From: Mytilus edulis
Taxonomy: Eukaryota
DNA: 64,000 nucleotides
NCBI RefSeq assembly: GCF_963676685.1
Contig: NC_092353.1
Span: 27,590,001 to 27,654,000, forward strand
Direction of reading: 5' to 3'
How positions within the stretch are numbered: the first letter of the stretch is position 1; every line of letters begins with the position of its first letter. The translations under genes and the position numbers were made by a program. The notes under the pieces are model-generated. The model made no database searches and was not told the origin of the DNA. It was given only the letters and a program-made list of their open reading frames with translations. Shown piece by piece: positions 11,350-64,000 of this stretch.

Positions 11350-11755
11350 ATTGTAACAAATTTATTCTGTTACACGATGGGCAATTTCTGTAATAGGCTG
11401 ATGTGCATTTAGTTACTTTATTTACTTCTATAACTGCTAATCCACCAGACATATGGTTAGGTTTAAAAATAAATTTGTTTGGTACTTTATTTATTATATC
11501 TCGTGATATATCCTTTGAATTTGTGACAAAAGCATACTCGACAGCGGTTTTAAGATCTGACGTTATACTTTGTACATACAACCAGTGATTGTCAGCATAC
11601 TTAGTATATGTTGAATTACTTAATTGATGATCCGCACACCAGTCATGGACACAAAGAAAGAAAATATGTAGTATGCTTATGACTTAGCTTCACAGAACCG
11701 TAAATACGATGGACCATTGTATTGTTTTTGTAGTACATCTGCGTATAAACTGCAT
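11350..11755 (-). pseudogene. 5' half of TupA-like ATP-grasp gene, copy 1 (two stops in the signal anchor, truncated by a hAT-like fragment)
   Basis: ATG at 11755: MQFIRRCTTKTIQWSIVFTVL*S*VISILHIFFLCV...YADNHWLYVQ...VPNKFIFKPNHMSGG...NLLQ. Homologous to 59055-59470. Confidence 0.8.
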
Positions 11756-11914
11756 AATTAGCAATATTTCTGTGTCAAATCATCGGAATATAGTCCTCAC
11801 AGATTCAGTCCTTCCGAAGAGCTTCTTTTGATTCATCGTCATTGCAAAGCTCCAGCCTTTCAACTTGACAGCCATATATGTATATCTAAAGAAACTTATG
11901 AGCTGTAAGTTAAA

Positions 11915-12707
11915 TAAACAACCTACAAATGAAATTCACAAGAAACGATAAAACTACGCTTGAATATATTTTTGTACATCAAGATATACTATCAATGAAG
12001 TTGTAAATGGGAATCATAAAAGAAAAGTGACCATTTTCAGAGTGTACAATAGCATGTATGGCCTTAGCTTCACAAGAATCCTTATAAGGAAAGGTATATT
12101 GCAGGTATTTCCAAGTGTTCCACTGAATCCCTTTCTAAAGTTCTTACTTCCATACTCACTGCATTCAAAGAAGGACTTCAGAAACATTCCGAAATTGCAT
12201 ATTCAAGAAGAGGTGTTAATCAGATGTGGATACTGAAAAATTTGAAAGAGTTATTGGTGAATTTACAATCGCAATCATTTAAACATTGTACCAACATTAA
12301 AACCTTTGATATTTCAACCGTTTATATCACTATTCAACATACTACACTTACTAAACTTACAGCAAGACTGAAAGTACTCGTCAGCTTATGTTTCTTTAAC
12401 AAAAAGGGCACTAGACGTTTTAATATCTAGTTTTGGGCAGGAATTCAGCTTACTTTGTGAAAAAATCATACAGAGTCATGCAATAAATACACCGAAGAGG
12501 ATATCACTGCCATGCTGAACCTTTTAATTGATGACATATTTGTTGAATTTGGAGGTTTGGTCTTCCAACAGACTATTGAAATCCCAATGGATACCAATTG
12601 CGCTCCTCTACTGGTAGATTTGTTTTTGTATTCTTATGAAGCAGAATGTATCCAAGGGCTTGTTCAGATAGGAGAAAAGAAATTAGCCCAGTCTTTTAAT
12701 TTCACCT
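11915..12707 (+). mobile_element. Penelope-like RT fragment truncated at the duplication breakpoint
   Basis: IKTFDISTVYITI and FQQTIEIPMDTNCAPLLVDLFLYSYEAE motifs. The fragment stops at FNFT, just before the catalytic YxDD position. Confidence 0.85.
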
Positions 12708-17668: not shown

Positions 17669-17877
17669 TGTAGATTATTGCGTTGCGTTGTGTATTTGAT
17701 CGTAAGCTAACTAAGGCGTTAAAGATAGAACTACGTCTGCCATTATACGTTTCTATTCAATACAACATAAAGTATAACAGTTACGCGACGTCACAAAGAT
17801 AGCGGCCGTACCGCAAAAAGGTACGTTAATATTAGCGCAATTCTTAACATTCTGGGGCCGCAGAAAATGATATTTAA

Positions 17878-19435: not shown

Positions 19436-19610
19436 TTAACTTAAATTTGAAATACAATATGAAAAATTCGTAAATTGTGACATAAAAAGAAATAAAATCA
19501 TATTTAAAGTCTCTCAATAGTATTTTAACTGTTCACGTCTGAATAATTTAACACTTTTACAAGTCTATATAATAACTGGAGTTAATTGAACAGTCTATAC
19601 ATCCACTAAT

Positions 19611-19664
19611 TTCTCCAGGGCAGAAAAGTTCTCCAGGGCAGAAAAGTTCTCCAGGGCAGAAAAG
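19611..19664. repeat. Three perfect copies of an 18-bp tandem repeat (ttctccagggcagaaaag)
   Basis: Directly visible, immediately downstream of the inner gag-pol stop codon. Confidence 0.95.
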
Positions 19665-19665
19665 T

Positions 19666-22600: not shown

Positions 22601-24879
22601 TTTTTTACGGGATGATGCGGAATGTAATGAACCTTGTTTGTGCATGTACTTTCATCATATACCTTTTCAATGAATCCTCTTTGTTCTTGATCTGTAATTA
22701 TTTCACCATACTTTCGGAACATCTCGGGATCCTTCTTAAGGCGACGAATAACGCTTTCCGTTCTGCGTTTTGCGATGCCTTCATTTGTCGGTAGTTCTGG
22801 CGCATTCTCTCTCTATGGTAATTTCGTAACATACTTATTATTTTTCTTCGTAATGGAGGTTTGTAAGTAATTTTCAATTGATTCAGCTAGGTCTGGATCA
22901 TTTTGTTCTTCAGCGTCAATTCCCAACGATTCAAGCTGCCAAAATTTTTCAAGATCGCACTCTTCTTGTTTGTGACATACTAGTATATTCATCATTGAGA
23001 AAGATGCATTACTGTTTCGCGTAGGGACAGGACCGGAAAGTAAATATCCAATTTTCGAGCTAACTGCGGTTGGACCGTTTCCACGCACTATTTTGTCTTG
23101 AACTATGTCCCAGTAGAAATCACCTCCAATTAATAAGGATATTTCAAATTGCTCTCCATCCATGACTGGGTGTGCTAATTGTAGACCACGTAAATATGAA
23201 AACTTCTGCGTGATTCCTATGTTGTGGGTTTGAAGTGGTGAAGCAATGGTTGGTACAATTAAAACTTTAATCGGGATTAAATCTCCTTCTGTAGACTTAA
23301 GATTAATTGTTGTTTTGTCAAGATTTCTCACCTTTTTTGTAGTACTTCCAAATGTAGCTATACTTAATGTTTCAGACCCTTCTTTTTTAATGTCCAATTT
23401 AGCTGCTAGTTCTTCGGTTATAAACGAGCGCTGAGCTCCCTCGTCAAAGAGTATTCTTGCATCTATACATGTATTTTTGTGAACGACTGGACTGAATGCG
23501 GTTTTCAGTAAAACAGTGGACCTTTCTTCGCTAGCGGTATACAACATAGAAGTTTCTGTGTCTACTTTATTTTGCGATTGTTCAGTTTCAATATGATGTT
23601 TATTTGAGTACGAGTTCTGTTTACATAATGAAGAGTGATGCTTCCGGTGGCAACACTTACACGTATTCTTGGATTTGCAATCGGCTATTTTATGCTTACC
23701 TAAACAATTAAAACATAACCTCTTTTCTTTTATAATGGCTACTCTTTTATCGTGATCTATGACATCTTTACATTCGTTAGGCCAGTGGTTTCCGTCACAA
23801 TATGTGCATTGTTTCTTCCGATTCGAGTTGAATAATTTGTCTGTTGTGTATATCGGACGGGTTTTATCTGTAGTTACTCGTTTAACGCCTGTTATGAAAT
23901 TTGCGCTAGGTGTTGCGGTTGAATACGTCTGTGTATAATCTCCGTAGCCGGACTCTTGAATAGAAATCTCTTTACCTATCGCGTTTCGAAGCGATTGAAT
24001 ATTCCAACTGTCGCTCCCGTTTTCTCGTGTTATATTTTTTCGTACTTCATGCGGTATCTTCCCGAGAATTACTGGTATCAATAACGATCCGTACATTTCC
24101 TGACATTGTCCGAGAGACTCTAGACCCCGTATGTAGGCTTCCGATTTGTCATGAAATGTTCTCAAACTTTCTAATGTATCATGTGGTGCGGGTATATCAA
24201 GTAGTGCTCTCATATATGCATTAATGATTTTATGTGGTTGCCCATAGCGGTTTCTCAATAATTCAATTGCTTTGTGGTAGTTTGGATTTGTCATGGTCAA
24301 TCCTGAAATTACGTTTGCAGCTTCAAATTGAAGCAATGAGTTCAAGTACGAAAATTTCTGAATGTCAGTTAATGTGTGATTGTGATGAATCGTGGTCTCG
24401 TATGAATCCCAGAAATATTGCCATTGTAGAATGTCTCCATTAAAATTGGGAAGAGATAGCTTTGGTAGGCGATGGTTATTACTTGAGGTCGAACTTGACT
24501 GAGATAACTGCTGACTTGTGTGAGTAAAAGGGTTTGTGTACGGAACAAACTCTGGTGCGTTTGAATCTAGTATAGAAGATGTTGCGTTTGTTACGGGCTT
24601 TAAGAACTTCTTAAATTTTCGAATTTTACCCTCTAAATCTAAATAATACTCATCTGTTTCAAGAATTTCATTTGTAATATCTTCTGATTCGACTGCATTT
24701 AATATCTGTTCGTCTATTGAGGCTAACGTCTTCTTTTTCTTCTCAATTGCTTCGAGCAATGTTGATACTTCCTCCGTGTCTATTTCTGAATCTCCGATGG
24801 CTTCCTCCAGTTTTTTAAAAACTTTTGTTACTGCTGCTTTGTTCCCCGCTCTCAAGGATTTTAGTCGGCTGATGTCCAT
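19666..24879 (-). pseudogene. gag-pol: Inner BEL single gag-pol ORF (~1737 codons) broken only by two in-frame stops
   Basis: ORFs 22813-24879, 21829-22722 and 19666-21819 share one frame. Motifs: LFDEGAQRSF protease, LYVDN RT, FTDAS/PRLEL/WSDS RNase H, GVDFTG/SDNA/FWERL integrase. Confidence 0.95.
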
Positions 24880-24891
24880 TCTCTCCGTTTG

Positions 24892-24905
24892 AAGTCACGG
24901 CACCA
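24892..24905 (-). promoter_or_regulatory. Primer-binding site complementary to the tRNA-His 3' end
   Basis: Minus strand TGGTGCCGTGACT, 1 nt inside the 5' LTR. Confidence 0.85.
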
Positions 24906-25087
24906 ATGTAGATTATTGCGTTGCGTTGTGTATTTGATCGTAAGCTAACTAAGGCGTTAAAGATAGAACTACGTCTGCCATTATACGTTTCTATTCAATA
25001 CAACATAAAGTATAACAATTACGCGATGTCACAAAGATAGCGGCCGTACCGCAAAAAGGTACGTTAATATTAGCGCAATTCTTAACA

Positions 25088-27050
25088 CCCTTGTTGAATT
25101 TCTATTTTCTGTTGCAATATGATATCCAAATAATAATCATTTCCGATAAGAATCTCTATTGTTGAACTTTCTAAGCAACTGGGCAGTGTGTCAGCAAGTT
25201 GCAGATTGTTACATAAGTATTTCACATTTTCACATACATCCATTTGTAAAGGTCTTCTTAGTATTGATCCTGTTATCTTAGGAACAACATTAGCATCAAT
25301 AAGCATACAAACTCCATCTTTTAGTCTGATCTTTAATGACACCTTTTGTGTTCTTAATGTTTTTGGCTTATCTGCACCAAATGTTACAAGAGTTATCCTC
25401 TCTCTAGCTTTCTTCTTCAAATTTAATCTCTTGGCCAAATTTTCTGTTATATATGTTCGCTGAGATCCGGAGTTCATTAGTAGTCTTACTACTTTTGTTT
25501 CAATAACTTCTGTATTTGACACAGTTGTTTGAGCTGTCTGCATCAAAACTATATCTCCGGAGGACAACAACCTATTCTCTGGTACGTTCTCTTCACTTAA
25601 AGCTATTTCACAAATTTCATCAGCTAGATGTGAAACTTCGAATTCTTTCTGTTGAGAGGGAATTGTCTTTGGGCATAGACTTCTATGGTGTCCCTTTTTC
25701 TGTTTGCAATGATAGCATGCTTTTTCAAATTTACAGTCTCTACTAACATGTCCTGGTTTCAAGCATGTATAACAACTATCTTTGATTTTCTGCTTTTTGT
25801 CTTCAATAGTACTGAACTTTCTGCACTCATCACTCCAATGGTGTCCATCACAATATCGGCAAACCATTGAATTTCCACTGCCTGAGCATTTTCCAAATGG
25901 CTTTATTGTCATCAGAGCTTCTGCAGATAAGTGTTTTCTTGGTTGAAAATTATTGTTGTTTGACTGGATTTTAGACTGCTGTTTTTCTTCAGAACTGGGA
26001 CCAGTATGTGTTTCCTTAGACTGACTTTCTGCAGCTTCCCTAGCAGTTAAGCAAAAATGTTAAGTAAGTATTGAAAAACTGTCTTAACTTCCCTACTGTC
26101 CATCTTTCATTGTTACCTTTCTGTATTTCAAGTTGAATCATGACTTCCTTTAGTAGCTTAGATGTTATCATCGAGATGAATACATCTTGGGTTACATCTT
26201 GATGCATTGCGTCCAAACTACGTAAGTGTCGTTCCAAGTCATCATAAAGTCTACGTAGATGTGTAGTTTCATTTGAAGCTGACTGAAGGTTTATTAAATC
26301 TGAACAGTGCTTGTTGACAACAGATTGAACATTTCCAAATCTTTCCTTTAGTATTGAAATTGCTACATCGTAATTTTCATGGGAGAGCGTTAAGTCAGAT
26401 ATAGCAGAATTAGCTGTTCCAAAAAGTTTGCTTTTCAAGTAATTTAATTTCTCTATTTTTGTCAAGCTTTGATTTGTGTGCACTGCTGCTTCCCAAAATT
26501 CTGTCCATTTTAACTTATCTCCATTGTACGAAACTAGGTCTAATTTAGGAAGTTTAACTGCACTTACTGTTGAAGGTTGACTTTTCCTCTGTAATTCTTG
26601 GAGTTGTAACTGTTGAAACTGTAATATCTGTTCTTGCATTTGTGTCTGTAATTGTAATAAATGCTCCACCTTGTGGTCCGTGGCCGTTTCTGTTTACTTA
26701 ATATCTGTAATTTTATCCTGAATTTCTTCCTCGAATATTTTTAATTCGTCTAAGCGCTGTGTTATACCGTCAAGCAATTAAAAATATATTTCACTTGCCT
26801 TTTTAAATTTTAGAATTTCACCCTCGTTATCTTCTTTCTCTTCTAATATAAGTGAAATTTCTTTCGTACTATCTTCAAGTTTTGCTACAAAATCCTTTAA
26901 TCGTCTCTTTGCTGATAAAATTTGCCTTAATTGTGTTGTCACACTTTCATCTTGAATCCCTTGTGCTATTATATCTCCACTTTTATCTAGTTCTTTAGCT
27001 AACAAATTATTGTACCTTGTACAGAGTCCTTTCAAATATGAGACTGCCAT
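25088..27050 (-). pseudogene. gag: Outer BEL gag (DUF1759-like, Cys/His knuckles) and aspartic protease (disrupted)
   Basis: VKLPKLDLVSYNGD, CRYCDGHHWSDEC, CYTCLKPGHVSRDC and LMNSGSQRTYIT (catalytic Asp reads Asn). Several stops and frameshifts. Confidence 0.9.
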
Positions 27051-40149: not shown

Positions 40150-43100
40150 ATAATAGTTATCAAAGGTACCAGGATTATAATTTAGTACGCCAGACGCGCG
40201 TTTCGTCTACATAAGACTCATCAGTGACGCTCAAATCAAAATATTTATAAAGCCAAACAAGTAAAAAATTGAAGAGCATTGAGGATCCAAAATTCCGAAA
40301 AGTTGTGCCAAATACGGCTAAGGTAATCTATGCCTGGGATAAGAAAATCCTTAGTTTTTCGAAAAATATAAAGTTTTGTAAACAGGAAATTTATAAAAAT
40401 GACTACATTATTGATATTCATGTCAACACCGAAGTGTTGACTACTGGGCTGGTGATACCCTCGGGGACGAAACGTCCACCAGCAGTGGCATCGACCCAGT
40501 GGTGTAAATAGTTATCAAAGGTACCAGGATTATAATTTAGTACGCCAGACGCGCGTTTCGTCTACATAAGACTCATCAGTGACGCTCAAATCAAAATATT
40601 TATAAAGCCAAACAAGTAAAAAATTGAAGAGCATTGAGGATCCAAAATTCCGAAAAGTTGTGCCAAATACGGCTAAGGTAATCTATGCCTGGGATAAGAA
40701 AATCCTTAGTTTTTCGAAAAATATAAAGTTTTGTAAACAGGAAATTTATAAAAATGACTACATTATTGATATTCATGTCAACACCGAAGTGTTGACTACT
40801 GGGCTGGTGATACCCTCGGGGACGAAACGTCCACCAGCAGTGGCATCGACCCAGTGGTGTAAATAGTTATCAAAGGTACCAGGATTATAATTTAGTACGC
40901 CAGACGCGCGTTTCGTCTACATAAGACTCATCAGTGACGCTCAAATCAAAATATTTATAAAGCCAAACAAGTAAAAAATTGAAGAGCATTGAGGATCCAA
41001 AATTCCGAAAAGTTGTGCCAAATACGGCTAAGGTAATCTATGCCTGGGATAAGAAAATCCTTAGTTTTTCGAAAAATATAAAGTTTTGTAAACAGGAAAT
41101 TTATAAAAATGACTACATTATTGATATTCATGTCAACACCGAAGTGTTGACTACTGGGCTGGTGATACCCTCGGGGACGAAACGTCCACCAGCAGTGGCA
41201 TCGACCCAGTGGTGTAAATAGTTATCAAAGGTACCAGGATTATAATTTAGTACGCCAGACGCGCGTTTCGTCTACATAAGACTCATCAGTGACGCTCAAA
41301 TCAAAATATTTATAAAGCCAAACAAGTAAAAAATTGAAGAGCATTGAGGATCCAAAATTCCGAAAAGTTGTGCCAAATACGGCTAAGGTAATCTATGCCT
41401 GGGATAAGAAAATCCTTAGTTTTTCGAAAAATATAAAGTTTTGTAAACAGGAAATTTATAAAAATGACTACATTATTGATATTCATGTCAACACCGAAGT
41501 GTTGACTACTGGGCTGGTGATACCCTCGGGGACGAAACGTCCACCAGCAGTGGCATCGACCCAGTGGTGTAAATAGTTATCAAAGGTACCAGGATTATAA
41601 TTTAGTACGCCAGACGCGCGTTTCGTCTACATAAGACTCATCAGTGACGCTCAAATCAAAATATTTATAAAGCCAAACAAGTAAAAAATTGAAGAGCATT
41701 GAGGATCCAAAATTCCGAAAAGTTGTGCCAAATACGGCTAAGGTAATCTATGCCTGGGATAAGAAAATCCTTAGTTTTTCGAAAAATATAAAGTTTTGTA
41801 AACAGGAAATTTATAAAAATGACTACATTATTGATATTCATGTCAACACCGAAGTGTTGACTACTGGGCTGGTGATACCCTCGGGGACGAAACGTCCACC
41901 AGCAGTGGCATCGACCCAGTGGTGTAAATAGTTATCAAAGGTACCAGGATTATAATTTAGTACGCCAGACGCGCGTTTCGTCTACATAAGACTCATCAGT
42001 GACGCTCAAATCAAAATATTTATAAAGCCAAACAAGTAAAAAATTGAAGAGCATTGAGGATCCAAAATTCCGAAAAGTTGTGCCAAATACGGCTAAGGTA
42101 ATCTATGCCTGGGATAAGAAAATCCTTAGTTTTTCGAAAAATATAAAGTTTTGTAAACAGGAAATTTATAAAAATGACTACATTATTGATATTCATGTCA
42201 ACACCGAAGTGTTGACTACTGGGCTGGTGATACCCTCGGGGACGAAACGTCCACCAGCAGTGGCATCGACCCAGTGGTGTAAATAGTTATCAAAGGTACC
42301 AGGATTATAATTTAGTACGCCAGACGCGCGTTTCGTCTACATAAGACTCATCAGTGACGCTCAAATCAAAATATTTATAAAGCCAAACAAGTAAAAAATT
42401 GAAGAGCATTGAGGATCCAAAATTCCGAAAAGTTGTGCCAAATACGGCTAAGGTAATCTATGCCTGGGATAAGAAAATCCTTAGTTTTTCGAAAAATATA
42501 AAGTTTTGTAAACAGGAAATTTATAAAAATGACTACATTATTGATATTCATGTCAACACCGAAGTGTTGACTACTGGGCTGGTGATACCCTCGGGGACGA
42601 AACGTCCACCAGCAGTGGCATCGACCCAGTGGTGTAAATAGTTATCAAAGGTACCAGGATTATAATTTAGTACGCCAGACGCGCGTTTCGTCTACATAAG
42701 ACTCATCAGTGACGCTCAAATCAAAATATTTATAAAGCCAAACAAGTAAAAAATTGAAGAGCATTGAGGATCCAAAATTCCGAAAAGTTGTGCCAAATAC
42801 GGCTAAGGTAATCTATGCCTGGGATAAGAAAATCCTTAGTTTTTCGAAAAATATAAAGTTTTGTAAACAGGAAATTTATAAAAATGACTACATTATTGAT
42901 ATTCATGTCAACACCGAAGTGTTGACTACTGGGCTGGTGATACCCTCGGGGACGAAACGTCCACCAGCAGTGGCATCGACCCAGTGGTGTAAATAGTTAT
43001 CAAAGGTACCAGGATTATAATTTAGTACGCCAGACGCGCGTTTCGTCTACATAAGACTCATCAGTGACGCTCAAATCAAAATATTTATAAAGCCAAACAA

Positions 43101-44130
43101 GTAAAAAATTGAAGAGCATTGAGGATCCAAAATTCCGAAAAGTTGTGCCAAATACGGCTAAGGTAATCTATGCCTGGGATAAGAAAATCCTTAGTTTTTC
43201 GAAAAATATAAAGTTTTGTAAACAGGAAATTTATAAAAATGACTACATTATTGATATTCATGTCAACACCGAAGTGTTGACTACTGGGCTGGTGATACCC
43301 TCGGGGACGAAACGTCCACCAGCAGTGGCATCGACCCAGTGGTGTAAATAGTTATCAAAGGTACCAGGATTATAATTTAGTACGCCAGACGCGCGTTTCG
43401 TCTACATAAGACTCATCAGTGACGCTCAAATCAAAATATTTATAAAGCCAAACAAGTAAAAAATTGAAGAGCATTGAGGATCCAAAATTCCGAAAAGTTG
43501 TGCCAAATACGGCTAAGGTAATCTATGCCTGGGATAAGAAAATCCTTAGTTTTTCGAAAAATATAAAGTTTTGTAAACAGGAAATTTATAAAAATGACTA
43601 CATTATTGATATTCATGTCAACACCGAAGTGTTGACTACTGGGCTGGTGATACCCTCGGGGACGAAACGTCCACCAGCAGTGGCATCGACCCAGTGGTGT
43701 AAATAGTTATCAAAGGTACCAGGATTATAATTTAGTACGCCAGACGCGCGTTTCGTCTACATAAGACTCATCAGTGACGCTCAAATCAAAATATTTATAA
43801 AGCCAAACAAGTAAAAAATTGAAGAGCATTGAGGATCCAAAATTCCGAAAAGTTGTGCCAAATACGGCTAAGGTAATCTATGCCTGGGATAAGAAAATCC
43901 TTAGTTTTTCGAAAAATATAAAGTTTTGTAAACAGGAAATTTATAAAAATGACTACATTATTGATATTCATGTCAACACCGAAGTGTTGACTACTGGGCT
44001 GGTGATACCCTCGGGGACGAAACGTCCACCAGCAGTGGCATCGACCCAGTGGTGTAAATAGTTATCAAAGGTACCAGGATTATAATTTAGTACGCCAGAC
44101 GCGCGTTTCGTCTACATAAGACTCATCAGT
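40150..44130 (-). repeat. Tandem array of ~11.2 apparently identical 355-bp units (non-LTR retrozyme, family 1)
   Basis: Exact 355-bp period (identical ORF calls at 40269, 40624 ... 43819). One type I hammerhead per unit on the minus strand. Confidence 0.96.
40187..40230 (-). ncRNA. Type I hammerhead ribozyme (repeats every 355 bp: 11 complete, a 12th truncated at 44130)
   Basis: Minus strand GCGUCA-CUGAUGA-GUCU(UAUGU)AGAC-GAAA-CGCGCG-UC/UGGCGU: intact core, stem I GCGUCA:UGGCGU, 4-bp stem II, palindromic stem III ACGCGCGU. Predicted GUC cleavage between 40193 and 40192. Confidence 0.92.
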
Positions 44131-50537: not shown

Positions 50538-51054
50538 GTCTTCGTAGAGGTCCGCGTTCATCGAATTTAAACACTGTCGAGTTTAGTTTACATAAGAATT
50601 TTAAATATATACGTATCCGTCCGATCCGTGCATAAATTTAATTTACTGATCGATCGCTGACCGTTGTCACGGTAACTCTCACATAGGTTTATATTTGACT
50701 TATCTGACGGATCCTATGGATCACCGATCACCGATCACTCATCGATCAGGCAAACATCCGTCACCGATTATTCACCAATCAGTCAAGTTCACGTCAAACA
50801 GTAACGCCTAAGGTTGCAAGTACTGTATATCTCTACCAAAAGACAACAGTTATATCCTCTTTCTCTTTTGGATTTAAACAAATACATTCTTAATATATGT
50901 TATATATAATGTTTCTTTTTTCTGAAACAAACTTTAGAAACATTATATATAAATTTCATTAAATGGATTGTTTGGTCAATGTTAACCAATCAGCTATTTG
51001 CGACCTATGTTTACGTAGGGACTTTCTAAAGTCCCTGGTTTACGTTTACTGTAT

Positions 51055-51601
51055 TAGCTGTATTTTGGCAAAACTTTTAGGAATTTTGGTTCTCAATGCT
51101 CTTCAACTTCGTACTTTATTTGGCCTTTTTAACTCTTTTAGATTCGAGCGTCACTGATGAGTCTTTTGTAGACGATACGCGCGTCTGGCGTATATACTAA
51201 ATTTAGTCCTGGTTTCTATGATGAGTTTATTTACAACCACTGGGTCGATGCCACGGCTGGTGGATATTTATTTCCCCGAGGGTATCACAAGCCCAGTAGG
51301 CAGCACTTTTTGTGCTGACATAAATTGTCATTGATATGGTTATATTTAGAAATTTACTATTTACAATTTTTTAAATTTTTTGAAATACTAAGGCTGTTCT
51401 ACCGCAGGCATAGACTACTTTAGCTGTATTTAGGCAAAACTTTTAGGAATTTGGGTTCTCAATCCTCTTTAACTTCGTACTTTATTTGGCCTCTAACTTA
51501 TTTAGATTCGAGCGTCACTGATGAGTCTTTTGTAGACGAAACGCGCGTCTGGCGTATATACTAAATCCTGATAGTCCTGGTATCTATGATGAGTTTATTT
51601 A
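51055..51601 (+). mobile_element. Retrozyme family 2, 1.5 units (364-bp period) with two hammerheads
   Basis: Hammerhead motifs start at 51146 (GATA variant) and 51510 (canonical CTGATGA-gtcttttgtagac-GAAA-cgcgcg-TC-tggcgt). Confidence 0.88.
51512..51555 (+). ncRNA. Type I hammerhead ribozyme (intact core)
   Basis: GCGUCA-CUGAUGA-GUCU(UUUGU)AGAC-GAAA-CGCGCG-UC/UGGCGU. Confidence 0.88.
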
Positions 51602-53069: not shown

Positions 53070-54470
53070 ATATATATTGAAAACAAAGTACTTAATCTAT
53101 TGACTGTGAAGACAATAACAATGAAAACCTAGGAGTAAACAAAGACTCACAAAGCCAAAGGACATTTACATCAACAGTTATGAATAATAAATAAGAAACA
53201 ACACGAGCTCAACTAAAAACCAGAAGTGAAATCAGGTGCTCATAACAGCCAATCAGCTCATGATGGCGACCGTAAAATTTCTTAAGTGATGACCTTAATT
53301 TGATTGATTCATAGCCCTGTCTTAGCAAGTTTTGAGATATCAGTATTCCTCGTTCAACAAAATCAACGTACTTTGAGCTAGCTGTAGAGCAACGTATCAA
53401 TTGAGAAACATATACTCCATATGCTGGTGCCGCTGGGATGTTGCTACACAGAAATGGAAAATCGACTATAGGAAAATTATGATCATCGCCTTTGTCATAA
53501 ATTTTGGTATTCAAGCTTCCATCAGTAGTCATTTCGAGAAAAAGGTCTAAATATGAAGCAGATTTATCTGTGTCGGTAGTTTCTTTAATTTCAATTTCAC
53601 TTGGATATATTGAATGTAAGTGATCACTGAATCTATTACTAGTATTATTACGAGACAGTACATTATCATTATACCGAAAGGTGAAATTAAAAGACTGGGC
53701 TTATTTCTTTTCTCCTTTCTGAACAAGCCCTTGGATAAATTCTGCCTCATAGGAATACAAAAACAAATCTACAAGTAGAGGTGCGCAATTGGTATCCATT
53801 GGGATTTCAATAGTCTGTTGGAAGACCAAACCTCTAAATTCAACAAATTTGTCGTCAATTAAAAGGTCCAGCATTGCAGTGATATCCTCTTCGGTGTATT
53901 CATTGCACGACTCTGTATGATTTTTCACAGAGTAAGCTGAATTCCTGCCCAAAACTAGATATTAAAACGTCTAGTGCCCTTTTTGATAAAGAAACATAAG
54001 CTGACGAGTTCTTTCAGTCGCGCTGTAAGTTTAGTAAGTTTAGTATGTTGAATAGTGATATAAACAGTTGAAAAATCAAAGGTTTTAATGTTGGTACAAT
54101 GTTTAAATGATTGCGATTGTAAATTCACCAATAACTCTTTCAAATTTTTCAGTATCAACATCTGATAAACACCTCTTCTTGAATATGCCATTTCGGAATA
54201 TTTCTGAAGTCCTTCTTTGACTGCAGTGACTATGGAAGTAAGAACTTTAGAAAGGGATTCAGTGGAACACTTGGAAGAACCTGCAATATACCTTTCCTTT
54301 ATAAGGATTCTTGTGAAGCTTAGGAAGCCATACATGCTATTGTACACTCTGAAAATGGTCACTTTTCTTTTATGATTCCCATTTACAACTTCATTGATAG
54401 TATATCTTGATGTACAAAAACATATTCAAGCGTAGTTTTATCGTTTCTAGTGAATTTTCATTTGTAGGTT
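53070..54470 (-). mobile_element. Penelope-like (Naiad-like) RT pseudogene, 5'-truncated
   Basis: RYIAGSSKCST, IKTFDFSTVY, IPMDTNCAPLLVDLFLYSYEAEF, FRYNDNV (catalytic YIDD decayed) and DFPFLCSNIPAAPAYGVYVSQLIR. Frameshifted. Confidence 0.88.
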
Positions 54471-54635
54471 GTTTATTTAACATACAGCTCCTAAGTTTCT
54501 ACAGATATACATATATGGCTGCCAAGTTGAAAGGCTGGAGCTTTGAGGATGACGATGAATCAAAAGAAGCTCTTCGGAAGGACTGAATCTGTGAGGACTA
54601 TATTCCGATGATTTGAAGCAGAAATATTGCTAATT

Positions 54636-55042
54636 ATGCAGTTTATACACAGATGTAATACAAAAACAATACCATGGTCCATCGTATTTACGGTTCTGTT
54701 TAGCTAAGTCATAAGCATACTACATATTTTCTTTATTTGTGTCCATGACTGGTGTGCGGTTCATCAATTAAGTAATTTAACATATACTAAGTATGCTGAC
54801 AATCACTGGTTGTATGTACAAAGTATAACGTCAGATCTTAAAACCGCTGTCGAGTATGCTTTTGTCACAAATCCAAGGGATATATCACGAGATATAATAA
54901 ATAAAGTACCAAACAAATTTATTTTTAAACCAAACCATATGTCTGATGGATTAGTAATTATAGAAGTGAATAAAGTAACTAAATGCACATCAGCCTATTA
55001 CAGAAATTGCCCATCGTATAACTGAATAATTTGTTTTACAAT
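54636..55042 (+). pseudogene. 5' half of TupA-like ATP-grasp gene, copy 2 (stops; truncated at 55043 by a CAGGGGTCG hAT-like fragment)
   Basis: MQFIHRCNTKTIPWSIVFTVLFS*VISILHIFFICV...YADNHWLYVQ...FIFKPNHMSDG...KCTSAYYRNCPSYN*. Confidence 0.8.
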
Positions 55043-57625: not shown

Positions 57626-59054
57626 GTTTTCTTCTTAACACATCTTTTCAAAACACACTCTCTCTAATTTTATCGAATAACGAATACTTTATTTCTCATA
57701 AAAATACCTGATGAAAAAAATTCACCATTAAATTATCTGAACAATTATAGTGACAAGCTAGTGATTTACATATTGAAATATTATAAAATGTGTAAGTATA
57801 TGTTAATCCCATAGGAGCAATACATTGTACACGTCCGAGACGTCAAATAAGCACGTAGAAAATAGCTTGCCTGGAGTTCATGATAATCAGTATATATTAT
57901 TCAATATCATTAGATAAAAAAAAAAATAAAGTGCCAATGACACGGAGTTCAAATGTCGTGTATGTGAGTAACTACAGTGTATCAGTAATCGTATGGCTTT
58001 CAATAATGAGCGAAAAATTCACCTCATAGAAGTTGAGGTTTTTCATGTCAATCAACGAAAATCTATTCGACATAAATGACCATTTTAACATCGCTCTTGA
58101 TAAGAAAAATATATATGAACAACAGCTTTAGAGGAAGAGATAATTTTACACTTTTGAATTACTTTGTAAAATATAATTTGTAGCAAAAACTTAATATGTG
58201 ATAATCTCATATATAATTAAATGATTAAATATTGATAACAAGATATCATAGATAGGTGAAAGATACCAGAGGATCATTTGTCCTAAAAACACATTACCCC
58301 CTTGTAATTATTTTTTTTCTCCCTAACAACGCCATGAACCAAAAACAAACAAACAAGAATTGACAAAAAATATCATAGAAAACCAAATATTGACAAACAC
58401 GAACCCGTTGAAAATGCGAGGAGGGTTCTCGTGCTCTCCGGAAGGGTAAGCAGATTCTGTACCACATGTACTTATTTTGGCAGTTTTTGTATTTTGAACT
58501 TGATGTAAGAAGTTTGAAGCCATATTGCTAAATGAATGATGCAAGACGAAATTCTGAGACTGATCTCTGACAGACTGATGACTTACAAAGGTTGTTATTC
58601 AGTAGATCTAATAGAGTCTACAAAAGACTCATCAGTGACGCTCGAATCCAAAAAAGTTAAAAAGGCCAAATAAAGTACGAAGAGCATTCCATTTACAACT
58701 TCTTTGAGAGTATTATTTTTGAGAGTTGTACATAATGTGCAATAACAAAGTCAAGACTAGTTTTATTGTCTTTTTTTAATTTTTACTAGCAGATCTCTGT
58801 TTGTCATATAACTCGTTCAGTTCCTTCTGATATACACTCCTGGTTTTCAAGTGGTTGGGTTGGAGCATTGCTGATGACGATGCGGAGGTTGTTTTTTTAA
58901 CATTCAGCTCCTAGGTTTCTACAGATATACATATATGGCTGTCAAGTTGATAGGTTGGAGCTTTGCGATGACGATGAATCAAAAGAAGCTCTTCGGAAGG
59001 ACTGAATCTGTAAAGGCTATATTCCGATGAATTGACGCAGAAATATTGCTTATT

Positions 59055-59985
59055 ATGCAATTTATACACAGATGTACAACAAAAAGAATAAAATGGTCCA
59101 TCGTGTTTACGATTCTGTGTAGCTTAGGCATAAGCATACTACACATTATCTTTATTTGTGTCCATCACTGGTGTGCGGATCATCAATAAAATAATTTAAC
59201 ATATACCAAAGATACTGACAAGCACTGGGCAAGATTGTATGTACAAAGTGTAACGCCAGATCTCAAAACCGCTGTCGAGTATACTGTTGTCACAAAAGCA
59301 AAGGATATATCACAAGATATTATAAGTAAATTACCAAATAAATATATAATTAAACCGAACCATATGTCTAGAGGATTTGCACTTATTGAAGCAAATAAAG
59401 TAACTAAAAAACACATCAGTCTATTACAGAAATTGCCCATCGTGTAACGGAATAGATTTGTTACAATGCTTGCAGAAGATATTCGATCTATGGTTACAAA
59501 TTGTGTTCAACCCTGGAAAAGAAAAATACTACCAGTATATTCCACCTAAATGTATGTTTGAGGAGTATCTAGGCTCTAGTGGGATTCCTATGGACTATAG
59601 AGTGTTCACATTTCATGGTAAAGCCTATTTCATTCAGGTTGCCGAAACAAAAGATTGACGTCATACTCACGACTTTTTCACTCCAAAATGGAAGCGGATT
59701 CAGATGAGGGAGGTACCAGAAATATATCCCATTAACTCTTTAGTTAAACAGCCTCCATTCTTTCATGAAATGTTGGGACACGCAGAAATCTTATCTCAGC
59801 CATTTATCATGATGCGTAATGATTTCTTTGCTTTTGATGACCAGTATTATTTTGCTGAATTCACTCCATCACATCATGGCTGTAATGGCAGATTTATTCC
59901 ATCAGTTATAGAGAATTATTTTATTTTGGTTATAAACAACCCGTCTGAGTATTCTGACCCGGAAGTTATATTACAGTTGAAGTAA
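59055..59985 (+). pseudogene. Full-length but disrupted TupA-like ATP-grasp ligase gene with N-terminal signal anchor (~309 aa reconstructed, intronless)
   Basis: MQFIHRCTTKRIK-WSIVFTILCSLGISILHIIFICV (TM), DKHWARLYV, LPNKYIIKPNHMS, YIPPKCMFEEYL, PMDYRVFTFHGKAYFIQV, EMLGHAEILSQPFIMMRNDFF, YFAEFTPSHHG. Lesions: TAA near 59187, +1 frameshift near 59408, TGA at 59656. Confidence 0.85.
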
Positions 59986-60807
59986 TAGTACATTACATAT
60001 AATGTTGTTATCACGCGCGATGAAAAACTGATAATTATATATTATCGGTAATTTGTACATTTTTCCTTTGATGTGTACTCGCTGATAATGCCAGTATCAG
60101 TGGACTGGCCGTGATATAAAAATTATTGGGTTAGTACGCAAATGACATGCGCGAATGCAACGCGTAAGGATCTACTTTCCCCTTTCATTCACAAAATTGC
60201 GCGTGATTTTTATTGCAGAAACGCACGAGATTTTTGGCGAATGAAACACTTGACATTGATCATTATAACTTTCACAAAGTTAGTTTAGCCTTTTTTGTTG
60301 TGAAAATGTAAACAGAAAATGCATGAAAAAGCCGACAGACTTAAAAAAAAAATGCGTTATCTATAATTGATATATAAAGTACAAAATGTACAACTAACAT
60401 CGTCTATGGTGTTCCAATCCGAGTGTTTATTCATACAATACCAATACAGAGCCTGGTGCCGTTCCAAGTAGTTTTCTTTTCTGTTTCTTGAGAAGTATTT
60501 GTTTTACCTATTCAGTCACTATAAAGTGTTACAATTCATATTTAAACGCAACACATAAATAGTGACCAAAAAGGTACCGCTATCACATGAGAGAAGCTAG
60601 GAAAAAATGAAATTTACGCATTTTCAACATTTTTGTCTAATGTGGGACCATCATATACAATTTAAAAGATGTGGTTTCATTGTCAATTTAAAGACAGATA
60701 TTCATAGAACAAAGAACAAAAAAGTGAACTAATTCATATGCGGATCTGGGATAAATTTTAAAAAGGGGTAACCGGGGTACCATCTATTAAAATGTTTGAA
60801 ATAATTA

Positions 60808-61050
60808 GACCAAATAAAAAAGTATGTGTGGTTCCAGTTACATCTGAAAAAAAGTTAGGGTAGGTATATAGGTAGGGATTTTTTTTTTAATTTTTAAGTT
60901 TTTTTTTACATTGAGTCTATGGGAGCAACATTCTGACTTTAACAGTGCTTAATGAAAAATGACAATAAAATCTTTAGGGTAGGCTATTTTTAAGCCGAAA
61001 AAGTAGGGACGGTAGGGTTACTGGAACCACACATATATTTTTATTTGGCC
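60808..61050. mobile_element. PIF/Harbinger-like MITE
   Basis: TTA|GACCAAATAAAAAAGTATGTGTGGTTCCAGT ... ACTGGAACCACACATATATTTTTATTTGGCC|TTA. Confidence 0.8.
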
Positions 61051-61678
61051 TTATGAAGTAGACAAGAAATGAGCTTGTTCAGATAATTTACAAATTACAG
61101 TCAGCCTTTCAGTAAAATATAATTATAAATCGTTGTACTTAAAAATGATGATCGATGAAATATCTGCTGATTCATATCGTATCATTCTAATGTTCTGCAC
61201 AGTAGAGCTTCTCTCGAAGAGAGCTCTTCGAGTCCTTCGAGAGAAGCTCTACTGTGATAGTCGACTTTGGTATATTTTTAACCCCTTATTGATAGGATTA
61301 CAAACTCCTTTAAATTCGGGACCTCGTGATTTCGTGTTTTTAAACCCGGGATTTCGGGATCAGGACCCTCCTATCCCCCTCTATGTTGATGCTTTGTGAA
61401 AAATAAAGAAATCTGACTTACCGGTATGCTACCATTATATTTGCCATTGTTAGAGTCATGTCCAAAGCAGAATATTAATGAAACACATGCAATAATTCCT
61501 TTTCAATACTTTGTGCAAGAGAACGCCATGTTTACCGCACTGTGACAAAATTTCAAATGACGTAATGCAGCCTGTGACGTCAAATGTGATTCGCCGTGAT
61601 TCGACGCGAAAAAGAAGTTCGTTTGTTATTTTCTCTATTATTGTAGTAATTTTTATTTTTTTTGAATTACCGATAAAC

Positions 61679-61802
61679 AGAATAAAGGACTTTTTGTTTT
61701 TGATACTGACTTTATCACAGAAAATATCAGGCTCGCCCTTCGGGCTCACCTGATATTTTACTGTGATAAAGTCAGTATCAAAAACAAAAAGTCCTTTATT
61801 CT
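61679..61802. repeat. Near-perfect ~124-bp hairpin
   Basis: agaataaaggactttttgtttttgatactgactttatcacag(t)aaaatatcagg arms around ctcgcccttcgggctca. Confidence 0.9.
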
Positions 61803-62804
61803 ATATATAATATATAGGAATAACTGTTCTTCTCTTGATTTTAAAATGGTCATCGCACAGCATATAGACAATCGAACATCAACAAAATGTTTTCAATATT
61901 TGAATAAGTTTTGGATTTTTAAAAATTGTGGCTTCATTATAGTACACAAGAGACATTAATTGTCAGAATGCAAATCTGGTGCAGTATAATTGGTACCGTT
62001 TATATAATTGTATTTTAACTATCACAAAGCGGCCACAATAATCAAATTTCAGAATGATCCTTGCACTATAATATCCTCGTCGTACCACCGAGTACTACAT
62101 ATATAAAAAAGAAGATGTAGTATGATTGCCAAGGAGACAACTTTCCACAAAAAACCAAATGACACAGAAATTAACAATTATAGGTCACCGTAGAGCCTTT
62201 TACATTATTGAGCAAAGCCCATACCTGATATTCAGCTATAAAAGGACCCGAAATGACGATGTAAACAATTCAACCGAGAAATCTAACGGCCAAATTTATA
62301 TAAAAAAATTATCGAAAAACAAATATATAACACATTAACAAACGACAACCATTGAATAACAGGCTCCTATGCAGAGTAAGCATTATTTTTGCTAAATAAA
62401 GAAGACAAAGAAGCAAGGTAACAATAATTCTAATGCAATTATTTTGCAACAATTGTTCTGATTGGATAACAGCAAGCGTAAAATTCTCTATCTCCTTGTC
62501 TGTAACTAAGGAAGCCGACATTTTGAATTTCGGAATGTATTGACATGTTATTTCTACAATAATAAACAAAAAACTCACTTGTTGCGCCTAAAAATCTTCT
62601 ATTTATCAAATTTTATTACATTCTGAAGCGGCAAAGAAGCCAGAAAAAGCCCGGTGTTTATGTTTGATGCCGGAAGCATACATATGACGTCACCTAGTGT
62701 AGGGACCAAAGAACATAACATTTTTTCGCGGAATTTTCTTTAATGAACATTTTACACCGAAATAATGATTGAAATTTAATTATAAACTTGTTTTGCATTA
62801 GAAT

Positions 62805-62971
62805 AGAGATAACTGTATTGTATTTGAAGCTTTAAGGACGTCCATCGGTAGTTTTACAGTCGCAAATACCCGTTTACCTGTCTCCGCTCCGCGTCGCCAG
62901 GTAAACTAAATTTGCGACAGTAAAACTACCGATGGACGTCTTAAAGCTTCAAATACAATACAGTTATCTCT
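62805..62971. repeat. Near-perfect ~167-bp hairpin
   Basis: agagataactgtattgtatttgaagctttaag(g)acgtccatcggtagttttac.gtcgcaaat...gtttacctg arms. Confidence 0.9.
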
Positions 62972-64000
62972 TAATAATTGGTAGGAACAATATTCTACAC
63001 ATGCAAACATCTCCGAAAACCATAACTAAGGACCAACACGAATCAATTAAAAAAACTACTCAACTGCTAATGAAAGGTAAGCAGTTCCTGGTGCATTAAT
63101 TGCATATCAATCATGCAGTCTAATATCTGGTGACAAGTGATTGTCAAATTTATATTCGATAAATGAAAGAAGAGAGTATGGCTATAAACTATTGAGAAAT
63201 ATTAAATGTACCATACGTTCCTTTGATGTTAAAATATATCTATTCCAATGGTGGTTTTAATTTCATAAAGGTATAAATGTATACATTTAAATTGAATAAG
63301 AGGCCTACGACCCGGATTTGAACGAGTTGTGTGATATACTATTGAATGATAGCTAATATAAAATCCTTTAAATACTCCTTAAATTTAAATATGCAGAAAC
63401 TAGTCAATAAATGTATGTTATTGTTAAATTTAAATGTTAAGATTTAATTTAAACTTAATTCAAAGGCTAAACGTTTAACTTATATGTTTAAATGATGACA
63501 CTTTCCATCGTGAATGAGCAAATTACTCATATTAAATCACCGAAACCGTCTGATATATAATTAAGACCGTACCACCATTTTATTAAGATGTATGACCAGA
63601 TATTAGATAGGCACTTCAGTTAGTTAGACACGATACAGCTACAAATGCACCGAAATTCCGCAAAAAACCCCACCAATTATTGATTGGGTAATGGAAAGAA
63701 TGTAAACCCTTGGCCATCATCAGTTTAGCCCAAACCAAAATTGGACATCCGTTTGATTTTGTGGGATCCATAAATTCGTAGTATGTCCAGTCTTAACAGG
63801 AACGCTAAATCCATGCCTTGCTTGCGATGTCTGTATGTTAAAAGATCTTGCATTAACTATACGAGTGTGAACTGTTGCAAGGCAAAATTTATGTCCGCAT
63901 TTGTTATCGAATAGTTCGTTTCTAGAAATGTAGCATTAGCGTTAGTATTTGTTGCACTTCAGTGTTTCTGTTGTTCCTTGGGTTTTCTCTTATAGATGTG

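What the first reader, a model, noticed from the sequence alone, without database searches (positions are those of the whole stretch)
59055..59985. Bacterial-type TupA-like ATP-grasp ligase with a type II signal anchor in an animal genome
Seen: joining three short ORFs and the upstream frame gives an intronless ~309-aa protein. It has the ordered motifs DKxxxRxYV, LPxxxIIKPNHxS, YxxIPPKxxxEEYL, PxDYRxFxFHGK, EMxxxAExLSxxFxxxRxDFF and YFxEFT. These are preceded by a short basic N-terminus (MQFIHRCTTKRIK) and a ~23-residue hydrophobic helix. Established: this motif order is that of the TupA-like ATP-grasp family, which are bacterial amide/peptide ligases linked to teichuronopeptide and surface-polysaccharide loci. 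Basic residues followed by a TM helix is the topology of Golgi/ER type II enzymes. Inference: a horizontally acquired ligase was retargeted to the secretory pathway and could add amino acids or peptides to glycans or secreted matrix, a modification I do not know to be described in molluscs. The gene sits among host transposons and occurs three times locally, which argues against contamination. All copies here are broken, so any functional paralog lies elsewhere.
Basis: partly seen in the sequence, partly recalled or inferred. Interest (0 to 1): 0.82.

Follow-up and report, generated by a model that had tools for sequence, protein, structure and literature searches.

The report
Dead mussel copy of algal-type ATP-grasp ligase
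The stretch is a broken duplicate of a real mussel (Mytilus) gene for a membrane-anchored TupA-like ATP-grasp ligase; an intact, apparently transcribed paralog lies about 23 kb downstream, and the family's nearest relatives are proteins of diatoms and other marine protists rather than bacteria, so it looks like a gene that mussels took from microalgae.

Summary
Window 59055-59985 (+) reads as a 309-codon, intron-free TupA-like ATP-grasp gene (Pfam PF14305). It has a basic N-terminus and a 23-residue hydrophobic anchor. It is broken by TAA 59187, a 1-bp insertion in the A-run 59406-59411, and TGA 59656. It has also lost two cysteines that are invariant in its clade. Two further local copies are truncated 5' fragments.

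The genome (Mytilus edulis or very near) holds two intact paralogs on the same chromosome. One is 309 aa and starts about 23 kb downstream. About 1.2-kb transcript-like contigs cover it in three independent run sets.

In a careful tree the mussel proteins fall inside a clade separated 100/100 from bacterial TupA-like proteins. The named members of that clade are diatoms and MMETSP protist transcripts. Its members already carry the N-terminal anchor, five invariant cysteines and, in protists, fusions to Golgi-type glycosyltransferases. The move to the secretory pathway therefore predates the mussels, and the likely donor is a microbial eukaryote. Among named animals only Mytilus has the gene.

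The likely function is ATP-dependent amidation of a glycan carboxylate in the Golgi or ER lumen. This is inferred, not shown.

The parts
58886..59054 (+). Conserved untranslated leader shared by all local copies and the intact paralog. It begins just after a pyrimidine-rich tract that ends in AG.
   Evidence: DNA homology among the copies starts here. In the intact paralog the transcript-like contigs start at the equivalent position, L003:1199, right after tttcatttgtAG.
59055..59985 (+). Pseudogene of a TupA-like ATP-grasp ligase: 309 codons, 91% nucleotide identity to the intact paralog L003.
   Evidence: Against L003: dS 0.244, dN 0.063, omega 0.26.
59094..59162 (+). Codons 14-36, the hydrophobic signal-anchor helix, preceded by a basic tail (59055-59093).
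   Evidence: In the 89%-identical M. californianus ortholog P0001 the best 19-residue Kyte-Doolittle window averages 2.7 and starts at residue 16. AlphaFold2 gives a helix at residues 14-31 of the paralog.
59187..59189 (+). Premature stop TAA. The intact paralog has TTA (Leu45) here.
59406..59411 (+). Frameshift: the window has six bases (AAAAAA) where the paralog has five (AAATG). This also removes the clade-invariant Cys119.
59656..59658 (+). Premature stop TGA. The intact paralog has GGA (Gly) here.
59509..59901 (+). The part that Pfam PF14305 recognises (profile positions 98-229). It holds EEYL, DYRVFTFHGK, RNDFF and AEFT.
54466..55042 (+). Truncated 5' fragment copy (leader plus about 130 codons, with a stop and a 6-bp deletion).
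11350..11934 (-). Truncated 5' fragment copy, part of an inverted segmental duplication of the 54.4-58.8 kb region.
   Evidence: Against the 54466-55042 fragment, dS is 0.026.
60011..61830 (.). A 1.8-kb insertion relative to the intact paralog's 3' flank.
   Evidence: L003 2324 pairs with 60010 and L003 2381 pairs with 61830.
61830..63844 (+). Downstream flank homologous to the flank of the intact paralog. It shows a DNA-level segmental duplication, not a retrocopy.
   Evidence: L003 2381-3716 matches window 61830-63844 at 79-89% identity.

Best explanation
Window 59055-59985 is a recently inactivated segmental duplicate of a Mytilus gene family. The family encodes single-pass, N-terminally anchored TupA-like ATP-grasp ligases (Pfam PF14305). 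It has at least two intact members on the same chromosome. One, a 309-aa protein, starts about 23 kb downstream of the pseudogene. The other is a 429-aa protein with a long stem region at 4.60 Mb. The family belongs to a eukaryotic (protist, including diatom) subfamily of TupA-like enzymes adapted to the secretory pathway, with an N-terminal anchor, a W-x-x-W-C motif and five invariant cysteines. In protists these domains are often fused to Golgi-type glycosyltransferases. Among named animals the family is seen only in Mytilus, so a mussel ancestor most probably acquired it horizontally from a microbial eukaryote (inference). How it would work (inference from the ATP-grasp fold, the retained Lys/Glu/Arg/Asp/Glu nucleotide- and Mg-binding residues, and the characterised homolog Cj1438): the catalytic domain faces the Golgi or ER lumen, uses lumenal ATP to turn a carboxylate such as a uronic acid C6 carboxylate on a glycan into an acyl phosphate, and then joins an amine (amino acid, ethanolamine or similar) to it as an amide. 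The window copy itself makes no functional protein.
For: The intact paralogs and the genome census come. Segmental duplication is shown. Omega of 0.26 against the intact copy means the window copy was under constraint for most of its history. It has also lost clade-invariant Cys119 and Cys143 and near-invariant Gly106. AlphaFold2 gives pLDDT 92.6 with an N-terminal helix at residues 14-31. Foldseek matches ATP-grasp ligases PsnB, Ddl, RimK and LysX/ArgX at probability 1.0. Near-invariant K100, E169, R254, D256 and E268 hold across 66 sequences. The deep HMM search gave 5519 hits, of which only 31 were at E<=1e-30. The looked-up members of these come from MMETSP, EukProt, T. oceanica and unnamed metagenome records. 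In the careful IQ-TREE, bacterial-type versus the W-x-x-W-C clade is supported 100/100. Mytilus+P0003+P0007 is supported 100/97. It is sister (100/94) to a 19-row clade that contains the diatoms, with another MMETSP lineage outside. The outgroup representative is 98% identical to an Eubacterium MAG and has relatives in 463 bacterial genomes. Named close hits are only M. californianus, M. edulis and M. coruscus. The ORF GC of 35% and GC3 of 32% match the host's 33%. One ~1.2-kb contig over L003:1199-2409, at depth 12-42 and without indels, appears in three run sets from three studies. The listed substitutions are 7 synonymous and 7 non-synonymous, none a stop. Cj1438C amidates the GlcA C6 carboxylate (PMC11800379).
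Against: Most members of the 'protist' clade are unnamed metagenome or SRA-assembly proteins. Only five rows trace to named protists. One long-branch cluster (P0025) contains a 55-aa fragment labelled as a Selenomonadales MAG. The two closest non-Mytilus sequences (P0003, P0007) are of unknown origin and could be other animals. No other mollusc genome could be searched directly, so 'only Mytilus' rests on protein databases. The three run sets are only guessed to be RNA. The one certified raw RNA run, sampled at 6%, had no reads on the ORF. Lumenal orientation, ATP use in the lumen, the substrate and the activity are all untested. No ATP-grasp ligase of this family has been shown to act in a eukaryotic secretory pathway.
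Confidence: 0.7

Rival explanations
1. One reading: a bacterial TupA-like ligase was transferred directly into a mollusc and then retargeted to the secretory pathway by gaining an N-terminal anchor in the animal.
For: PF14305 is overwhelmingly bacterial. The outgroup representative has relatives in 463 bacterial genomes across many phyla. The control genome Bacteroides thetaiotaomicron carries the family. The coding region is intron-free.
Against: Bacterial-type sequences are separated from the clade that holds Mytilus by a 100/100 branch. They score 90-115 bits against 120-240 bits for the protist-type ones. The anchor, the W-x-x-W-C motif and the five invariant cysteines are shared with diatom and MMETSP proteins. 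They were therefore present before the mussel acquired the gene.
Confidence: 0.08
2. Vertical inheritance: an ancient eukaryotic secretory ATP-grasp ligase kept in the mussel lineage and lost in almost all other animals.
For: The clade is eukaryotic. The Mytilus family is old, with two paralog types only 53-56% identical. Composition is fully host-like. P0003 and P0007 are of unknown origin and could be other invertebrates.
Against: Protein collections of about 15 billion sequences, which include NCBI and UniRef, returned no named animal other than Mytilus. The Mytilus clade is nested among protist lineages rather than outside them. Vertical descent would need very many independent losses.
Confidence: 0.17
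3. Transfer through a giant virus (Nucleocytoviricota) of a protist or of the mussel, rather than directly from an alga.
For: The language-model look-alike search puts a Nucleocytoviricota TupA-like cluster first. BFVD holds TupA-like folds in Marseillevirus LCMAC103 and ChoanoV1. Very long intron-free multi-glycosyltransferase fusions (1143-1928 aa) are typical of giant viruses.
Against: The viral proteins are only 17-21% identical to the mussel protein, against 25-36% for the protist-type ones. Three scans of IMG/VR with the clade alignment and two clade members found no relative.
Confidence: 0.05
4. Contamination or assembly artefact: the ORF belongs to an alga or bacterium in the sample, not to the mussel.
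For: Mussels filter-feed on diatoms, so algal DNA can be present in tissue samples.
Against: The copies lie inside a chromosome-scale contig of a 1.37-Gb assembly. They sit between Pao/BEL retrotransposons and host satellites. There are eight matches in two clusters on that contig, some decayed. Composition is host-like. Homologs are annotated in three Mytilus species.
Confidence: 0.01

Closest known systems
Cj1438 C-terminal domain of Campylobacter jejuni NCTC 11168 (TupA-like ATP-grasp amidoligase)
   Same: It has the same Pfam family and ATP-grasp fold. It acts on a glycan, forming an amide at the C6 carboxylate of glucuronic acid. It is fused to a glycosyltransferase, as the protist relatives of the mussel protein are (PMC11800379).
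   Different: It is bacterial and cytoplasmic, with no signal anchor and no conserved cysteine set. It falls on the other side of the 100/100 split only by inference, because it was not included in the tree.
Bacterial TupA-like proteins such as WemR (Proteus mirabilis) and CfmP (Klebsiella pneumoniae)
   Same: Same Pfam PF14305 family. They are predicted or shown to decorate surface polymers or proteins (PMC13419641).
   Different: They have an N-terminal 'NP-x-TFNEK-lqWLK' module in place of the anchor and W-x-x-W-C. They lie in operons with polysaccharide genes. The mussel genes stand alone among transposons.
Diatom and other protist W-x-x-W-C TupA-like proteins (e.g. Thalassiosira oceanica THAOC_10061 / EJK68731.1, Entomoneis paludosa EP00522_P008483)
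   Same: Same subfamily by tree. They share the N-terminal hydrophobic anchor, the five invariant cysteines and the catalytic residues.
   Different: They are 25-36% identical to the mussel protein and uncharacterised. Some are domains of very large multi-glycosyltransferase proteins, whereas the mussel proteins are single-domain.
CPED1 / C7orf58 of metazoans (secreted TTL-like ATP-grasp fused to a PC-esterase)
   Same: [quoted passage not shown]
   Different: It belongs to a different ATP-grasp family (tubulin-tyrosine-ligase-like), is vertically inherited in animals and is multi-domain. It is not related to PF14305 beyond the fold.

Membership tests
TupA-like ATP-grasp (Pfam PF14305) | Match to the family HMM above the gathering score | tested here: met
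   Window piece 59659-59982 scores 33 bits, E 5.7e-8, against a cut-off of 25. The six-frame genome search over 59509-59901 gives 55.7 bits. The intact paralogs score 80.4 and 85.8 bits.
TupA-like ATP-grasp (Pfam PF14305) | ATP-grasp three-dimensional fold | tested here: met
   The AlphaFold2 model of intact paralog L003 has pLDDT 92.6. Foldseek against PDB returns PsnB, D-Ala-D-Ala ligase, RimK, LysX/ArgX and PurK at probability 1.0. This was tested on the paralog, not on the broken window copy.
TupA-like ATP-grasp (Pfam PF14305) | Conserved nucleotide- and Mg-binding residues (Lys in KPNH, Glu in EEYL, Arg/Asp in RxDFF, Glu in AEFT) | tested here: met
   K100, E169, R254, D256 and E268 are at least 90% conserved across 66 sequences and present in L003 and L001. 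The codons are also present in the window copy. There the frame is broken and G106, C119 and C143 are replaced.
TupA-like ATP-grasp (Pfam PF14305) | ATP-dependent amide-bond formation | not testable with these tools
   This needs an enzyme assay.
TupA-like ATP-grasp (Pfam PF14305) | Genomic linkage to surface-polysaccharide biosynthesis genes (the bacterial hallmark) | tested here: not met
   The neighbours in the window are retrotransposons and satellites. The functional link survives only as fusions to glycosyltransferases in protist relatives.
Type II (N-in, C-lumenal) Golgi/ER membrane enzyme | Short basic N-terminal tail followed by one hydrophobic helix, with the catalytic domain C-terminal to it | tested here: met
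   The tail MQF(T/I)HRCTTKRIK carries four Lys/Arg. It is followed by a 23-residue hydrophobic stretch with Kyte-Doolittle mean 2.7 in the 89%-identical M. californianus ortholog P0001 and a predicted helix at 14-31. L001, P0002, P0003 and many protist relatives have the same layout.
Type II (N-in, C-lumenal) Golgi/ER membrane enzyme | Lumenal exposure of the catalytic domain | tested here: inconclusive
   The support is indirect. Five cysteines are invariant in the clade. The median is 6 Cys per domain against 3 in bacterial-type sequences. Protist relatives are fused to lumenal glycosyltransferase families. A sequon test was weak, 12 of 26 against 4 of 18. There is no localisation data.
Horizontally acquired gene in an animal | Physically integrated in the host chromosome with host-like composition | tested here: met
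Horizontally acquired gene in an animal | Nested inside a non-animal clade with strong support | tested here: met
   100/100 for the clade and 100/94 for Mytilus plus the diatom-containing sister clade, with an MMETSP lineage outside. The root is assumed to lie on the bacterial branch.
Horizontally acquired gene in an animal | Absent from other animals | tested here: inconclusive
   No named animal other than Mytilus appears in three word searches and one exhaustive HMM search. Other mollusc genomes could not be searched, and P0003 and P0007 are of unknown origin.
Horizontally acquired gene in an animal | Expression of an intact copy | tested here: inconclusive
   Three contig sets from three studies hold a ~1.2-kb contig over the ORF at depth 12-42, and unique flanks are uncovered. 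The sets are only guessed to be RNA, and the certified RNA run showed no reads.

The most novel reading that the evidence does not exclude
Mussels domesticated an algal Golgi-lumenal ATP-grasp amidoligase. They use it to cap carboxylates, such as uronic acids in secreted glycans or acidic residues of matrix proteins (byssus, shell matrix, mucus), with amino acids or small amines. This would be an ATP-dependent glycan or matrix modification not described in animals. The same uncharacterised enzyme class would work alongside fused glycosyltransferases in diatoms and other protists.
Probability: 0.25. Interest if true: 0.75.

Novelty: new variant of a known kind. Interest (0 to 1): 0.52.

Why it matters
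The window feature itself is a dead gene of no functional consequence. It does, however, flag a small, intact and apparently transcribed Mytilus gene family that public annotation lists only as 'uncharacterized protein'. [quoted passage not shown] If the branch is active, it would be a new kind of lumenal, ATP-driven amidation of glycans or matrix in eukaryotes. It would also be a clean case of gene transfer from a food organism (microalga) to an animal. I found no paper in the searchable library that describes PF14305 proteins in animals or protists.

Tried and rejected
1. The joined or repaired window protein was never sent to a search tool. The four stop-free pieces were searched apart, and the intact paralog L003 served as the full-length query.
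The genomic context of the unnamed metagenomic relatives therefore could not be read.
3. The word-index protein searches found only Mytilus and a few query members and named no further taxa. The queries were L003, the 14-sequence alignment and P0003.
4. Three IMG/VR scans found no relative.
5. The genome-contig scan with alignment A3 failed because no stretch was conserved enough.
6. The metagenome scan with A1 found nothing. The scan with P0010 fetched only loci for its glycosyltransferase part, none with the ATP-grasp domain.
7. The PDB sequence search gave no hit. NCBIfam has no model for the family.
8. A retrocopy origin for the window copy was considered. It was rejected because homology to the intact locus continues at least 1.4 kb past the ORF.
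9. An N-glycosylation sequon after W-x-x-W-C looked conserved by eye. A crude count gave only 12 of 26 against 4 of 18, so it is not used as evidence.
10. The many 'joints' at L003:564 to about 2653 in the read table come from repeats and the retrozyme satellite, not from the gene.

Full report
**What is in the window**

Frame 1 opens with MQFIHRCTTKRIK and the 23-residue hydrophobic stretch WSIVFTILCSLGISILHIIFICV. It continues through DKHWARLYV and LPNKYIIKPNHMS. Frame 2 then carries YQYIPPKCMFEEYL, PMDYRVFTFHGK, EMLGHAEILSQPFIMMRNDFF and YFAEFT, and ends at TAA 59983-59985.

Three lesions break the gene:
- TAA at 59187-59189.
- A 1-bp insertion in the A-run 59406-59411.
- TGA at 59656-59658.

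The insertion was placed by aligning the copy with an intact paralog.

Pfam PF14305 (ATPgrasp_TupA) hits the last piece at E 5.7e-8 (33 bits, cut-off 25) and the third piece at E 0.023. I did not search a joined or repaired version. The intact paralog served as the full-length query instead.

**Local copies**

The 5' 582 bp (58886-59467) recur at 54466-55042 (+) and 11350-11934 (-) with 86-88% identity. These two fragments share the same 3' break, a 6-bp deletion and stops. They belong to a larger inverted segmental duplication, roughly 54.4-58.8 kb against 11.9-1.3 kb, and are very close to each other (dS 0.026).

The rest of the window is host repeat landscape. It holds two Pao/BEL LTR retrotransposons at 14.3-26.7 kb, a 355-bp satellite at 40.2-44.1 kb and other tandem repeats.

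**The genome and the intact paralogs**

The window is G000:C10:27590001-27654000 of a 1.37-Gb assembly. One paralog's protein is identical over the aligned domain to an annotated Mytilus edulis protein. The other is 89% identical to M. californianus LOC127725834. The genome is therefore M. edulis or a very near relative.

Searches of the whole assembly with the Pfam model and with the protein place every match on contig C10, in two clusters.
- **Cluster at 27.60-27.67 Mb:** the window pseudogene, its two fragments, and an intact 309-aa gene, L003:1369-2295. This gene starts about 23 kb downstream of the pseudogene.
- **Cluster at 4.60-4.96 Mb:** an intact 429-aa gene (L001) with the same anchor followed by a long low-complexity stem, a copy with one TAA (L002), and small fragments.

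**History of the window copy**

Homology to the intact locus continues past the ORF. L003 2381-3716 matches window 61830-63844, interrupted by a 1.8-kb insertion at 60011-61830. The copy is therefore a DNA-level segmental duplicate, not a retrocopy.

Against L003 it is 91% identical, with dS 0.244, dN 0.063 and omega 0.26. It was under purifying selection for much of the time since duplication and died fairly recently.

Besides the three frame-breaking lesions, it has replaced Cys119 and Cys143, which are invariant in the clade, and Gly106, which is nearly invariant.

**Is the family real and working?**

The intact proteins match PF14305 at E 1.9e-22 and 4.3e-24. An AlphaFold2 model of the 309-aa paralog, built on a 66-sequence alignment, has mean pLDDT 92.6 and an N-terminal helix at residues 14-31. 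Foldseek finds ATP-grasp ligases (PsnB, D-Ala-D-Ala ligase, RimK, LysX/ArgX, PurK) at probability 1.0. No solved structure matches by sequence.

K100, E169, R254, D256 and E268, the usual nucleotide- and Mg-binding positions of ATP-grasp enzymes, are at least 90% conserved and present in both intact paralogs. ORF GC (35%) and GC3 (32%) equal the host background of 33%.

**Expression**

Twenty public runs hold the stretch. I laid four of them on L003. In three contig sets from three studies and two species labels, a single contig of about 1.2 kb covers L003:1199-2409 (1199-2287 in one set). Depth is 12-42, there are no indels, and about 2% of positions differ. Unique flanks (373-496 and 2853-3717) have no depth.

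The listed substitutions inside the ORF are 7 synonymous and 7 non-synonymous, and none is a stop. With about four times as many non-synonymous as synonymous sites, this again points to constraint.

All three contigs start right after tttcatttgtAG, and two of them carry 37 and 126 further letters that do not lie on the locus. This suggests a 3' splice site and an upstream 5'-UTR exon. That is an inference.

Two caveats apply. The runs are only guessed to be RNA. The one certified raw RNA run, of which 6% was read, had no reads on the ORF.

**Where the family comes from**

An exhaustive HMM search of 1.84 billion cluster representatives gave 5519 hits but only 31 at E<=1e-30. Below these lies a plateau at 90-115 bits.

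I looked up thirty of the best non-Mytilus hits. Most are unnamed metagenome or SRA-assembly proteins. The named ones are:
- MMETSP protist transcripts (the P0019 and P0023 clusters).
- Entomoneis paludosa (P0030).
- Thalassiosira oceanica EJK68731.1 (the P0032 cluster).

One long-branch cluster (P0025) holds a 55-aa fragment labelled as a Selenomonadales MAG.

Members of this group share several features with the mussel proteins:
- An N-terminal hydrophobic segment.
- A W-x-x-W-C motif and five invariant cysteines.
- In several cases they form the C-terminal domain of 1143-1928-aa proteins that carry GT31, Fringe, GT32, GT8, GT2, DUF273 and methyltransferase domains.

The plateau sequences instead have the bacterial N-terminal motif. 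One representative, P0123, is 98% identical to an Eubacterium MAG and has relatives in 463 bacterial genomes.

A careful IQ-TREE run (55 rows, 306 columns, LG+C20) gives the following:
- The two groups separate at 100/100.
- Mytilus joins two sequences of unknown origin (P0003, P0007) at 100/97.
- This group is sister, at 100/94, to a 19-row clade that contains the diatoms.
- Another MMETSP lineage branches outside.

A quick 76-row tree agrees.

Viral candidates are much more distant. The best are Marseillevirus LCMAC103 and ChoanoV1 at 17-21% identity, and three IMG/VR scans found nothing.

Among named proteins, only M. californianus, M. edulis and M. coruscus have close relatives.

**Reading**

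The family is a member of PF14305, but of a eukaryotic, secretory-pathway-adapted branch. The anchor was not added in the mussel. The patchy animal distribution and the nested position favour transfer from a microbial eukaryote into a mussel ancestor. Mussels filter-feed on such organisms.

The transfer is old enough for complete compositional adaptation and for two paralog types only 53-56% identical. Vertical descent with massive loss remains possible, because I could not search other mollusc genomes and P0003 and P0007 are unplaced. A direct bacterial donor is disfavoured, and contamination is excluded.

**Mechanism (inferred)**

The basic tail, the single helix and the cysteine-rich C-terminal domain give an N-in, C-lumenal topology. 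The glycosyltransferase fusions in protists mirror C. jejuni Cj1438. There a GT2 domain is fused to a TupA-like ATP-grasp domain that amidates the C6 carboxylate of glucuronic acid (PMC11800379).

The most likely activity is therefore ATP-dependent amidation of a glycan carboxylate in the Golgi or ER lumen. Modification of a secreted protein is the alternative. For comparison, see CfmP acting on FimA (PMC13419641) and the secreted TTL-like ATP-grasp domain of metazoan CPED1/C7orf58 (PMC2824669).

Lumenal ATP is available to other Golgi enzymes such as secretory-pathway kinases. That statement rests on my own knowledge and was not tested here.

**Literature**

Searches for TupA-like, PF14305, ATP-grasp with bivalve or HGT, and ATP-grasp with Golgi lumen found no description of this family in animals or protists.

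**Limits**

- Sequencing-run ids and organisms are coded.
- Only one read-laying run was allowed, so expression of the window pseudogene itself was not examined.

Noticed in passing
window 14316-26669 (-): Two Pao/BEL-type LTR retrotransposon copies with long open frames: reverse transcriptase, Peptidase_A17, integrase, DUF1759/DUF1758 gag-like, and DUF5641. They may be young elements.
   Followed up: partly
window 40152-44130; also 9095-9291, 51054-51599; L003:2610-2811: A 355-bp satellite of 11.2 units at 100% match, noted by other readers as a hammerhead retrozyme. A related unit next to the intact paralog shows depth 4800-11000 in the transcript-like contig sets.
   Followed up: no
window 54.4-58.8 kb versus 11.9-1.3 kb: A large inverted segmental duplication at about 92% identity with indels. 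It carries one of the truncated ligase fragments on each arm.
   Followed up: partly
window 20896-21225 (-) and 59217-59704 (+), via protein P0004: A public M. edulis gene model ('unnamed protein product', 263 aa) is a chimera. It joins a Pao retrotransposon piece to a frameshifted TupA-like pseudogene read on in the wrong frame. This is an annotation artefact from another copy or allele.
   Followed up: partly
window 61198-61256, 61673-61808, 62805-62971: Stretches that match their own reverse complement at 87-89% (hairpin or MITE-like) in the 3' flank of the pseudogene.
   Followed up: no
window 2578-3086 and 6051-6569: Tandem arrays with 51-bp and 146-bp periods built from the same TCGAGAT/ATCTCGA-rich unit, in opposite orientations.
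   Followed up: no
L009:4892-6796 and L010:10001-10309: Metagenomic relatives of the glycosyltransferase part of the protist fusion protein P0010 are interrupted. There is a 1.1-kb gap in L009, and only the first 103 residues are present in L010. This looks like introns, that is, eukaryotic genomes.
   Followed up: no
G000:C10:4959671-4960088 (L005): Small inverted fragments of the long-stem paralog type lie about 310 kb from L002. They are further decayed copies of the family.
   Followed up: no
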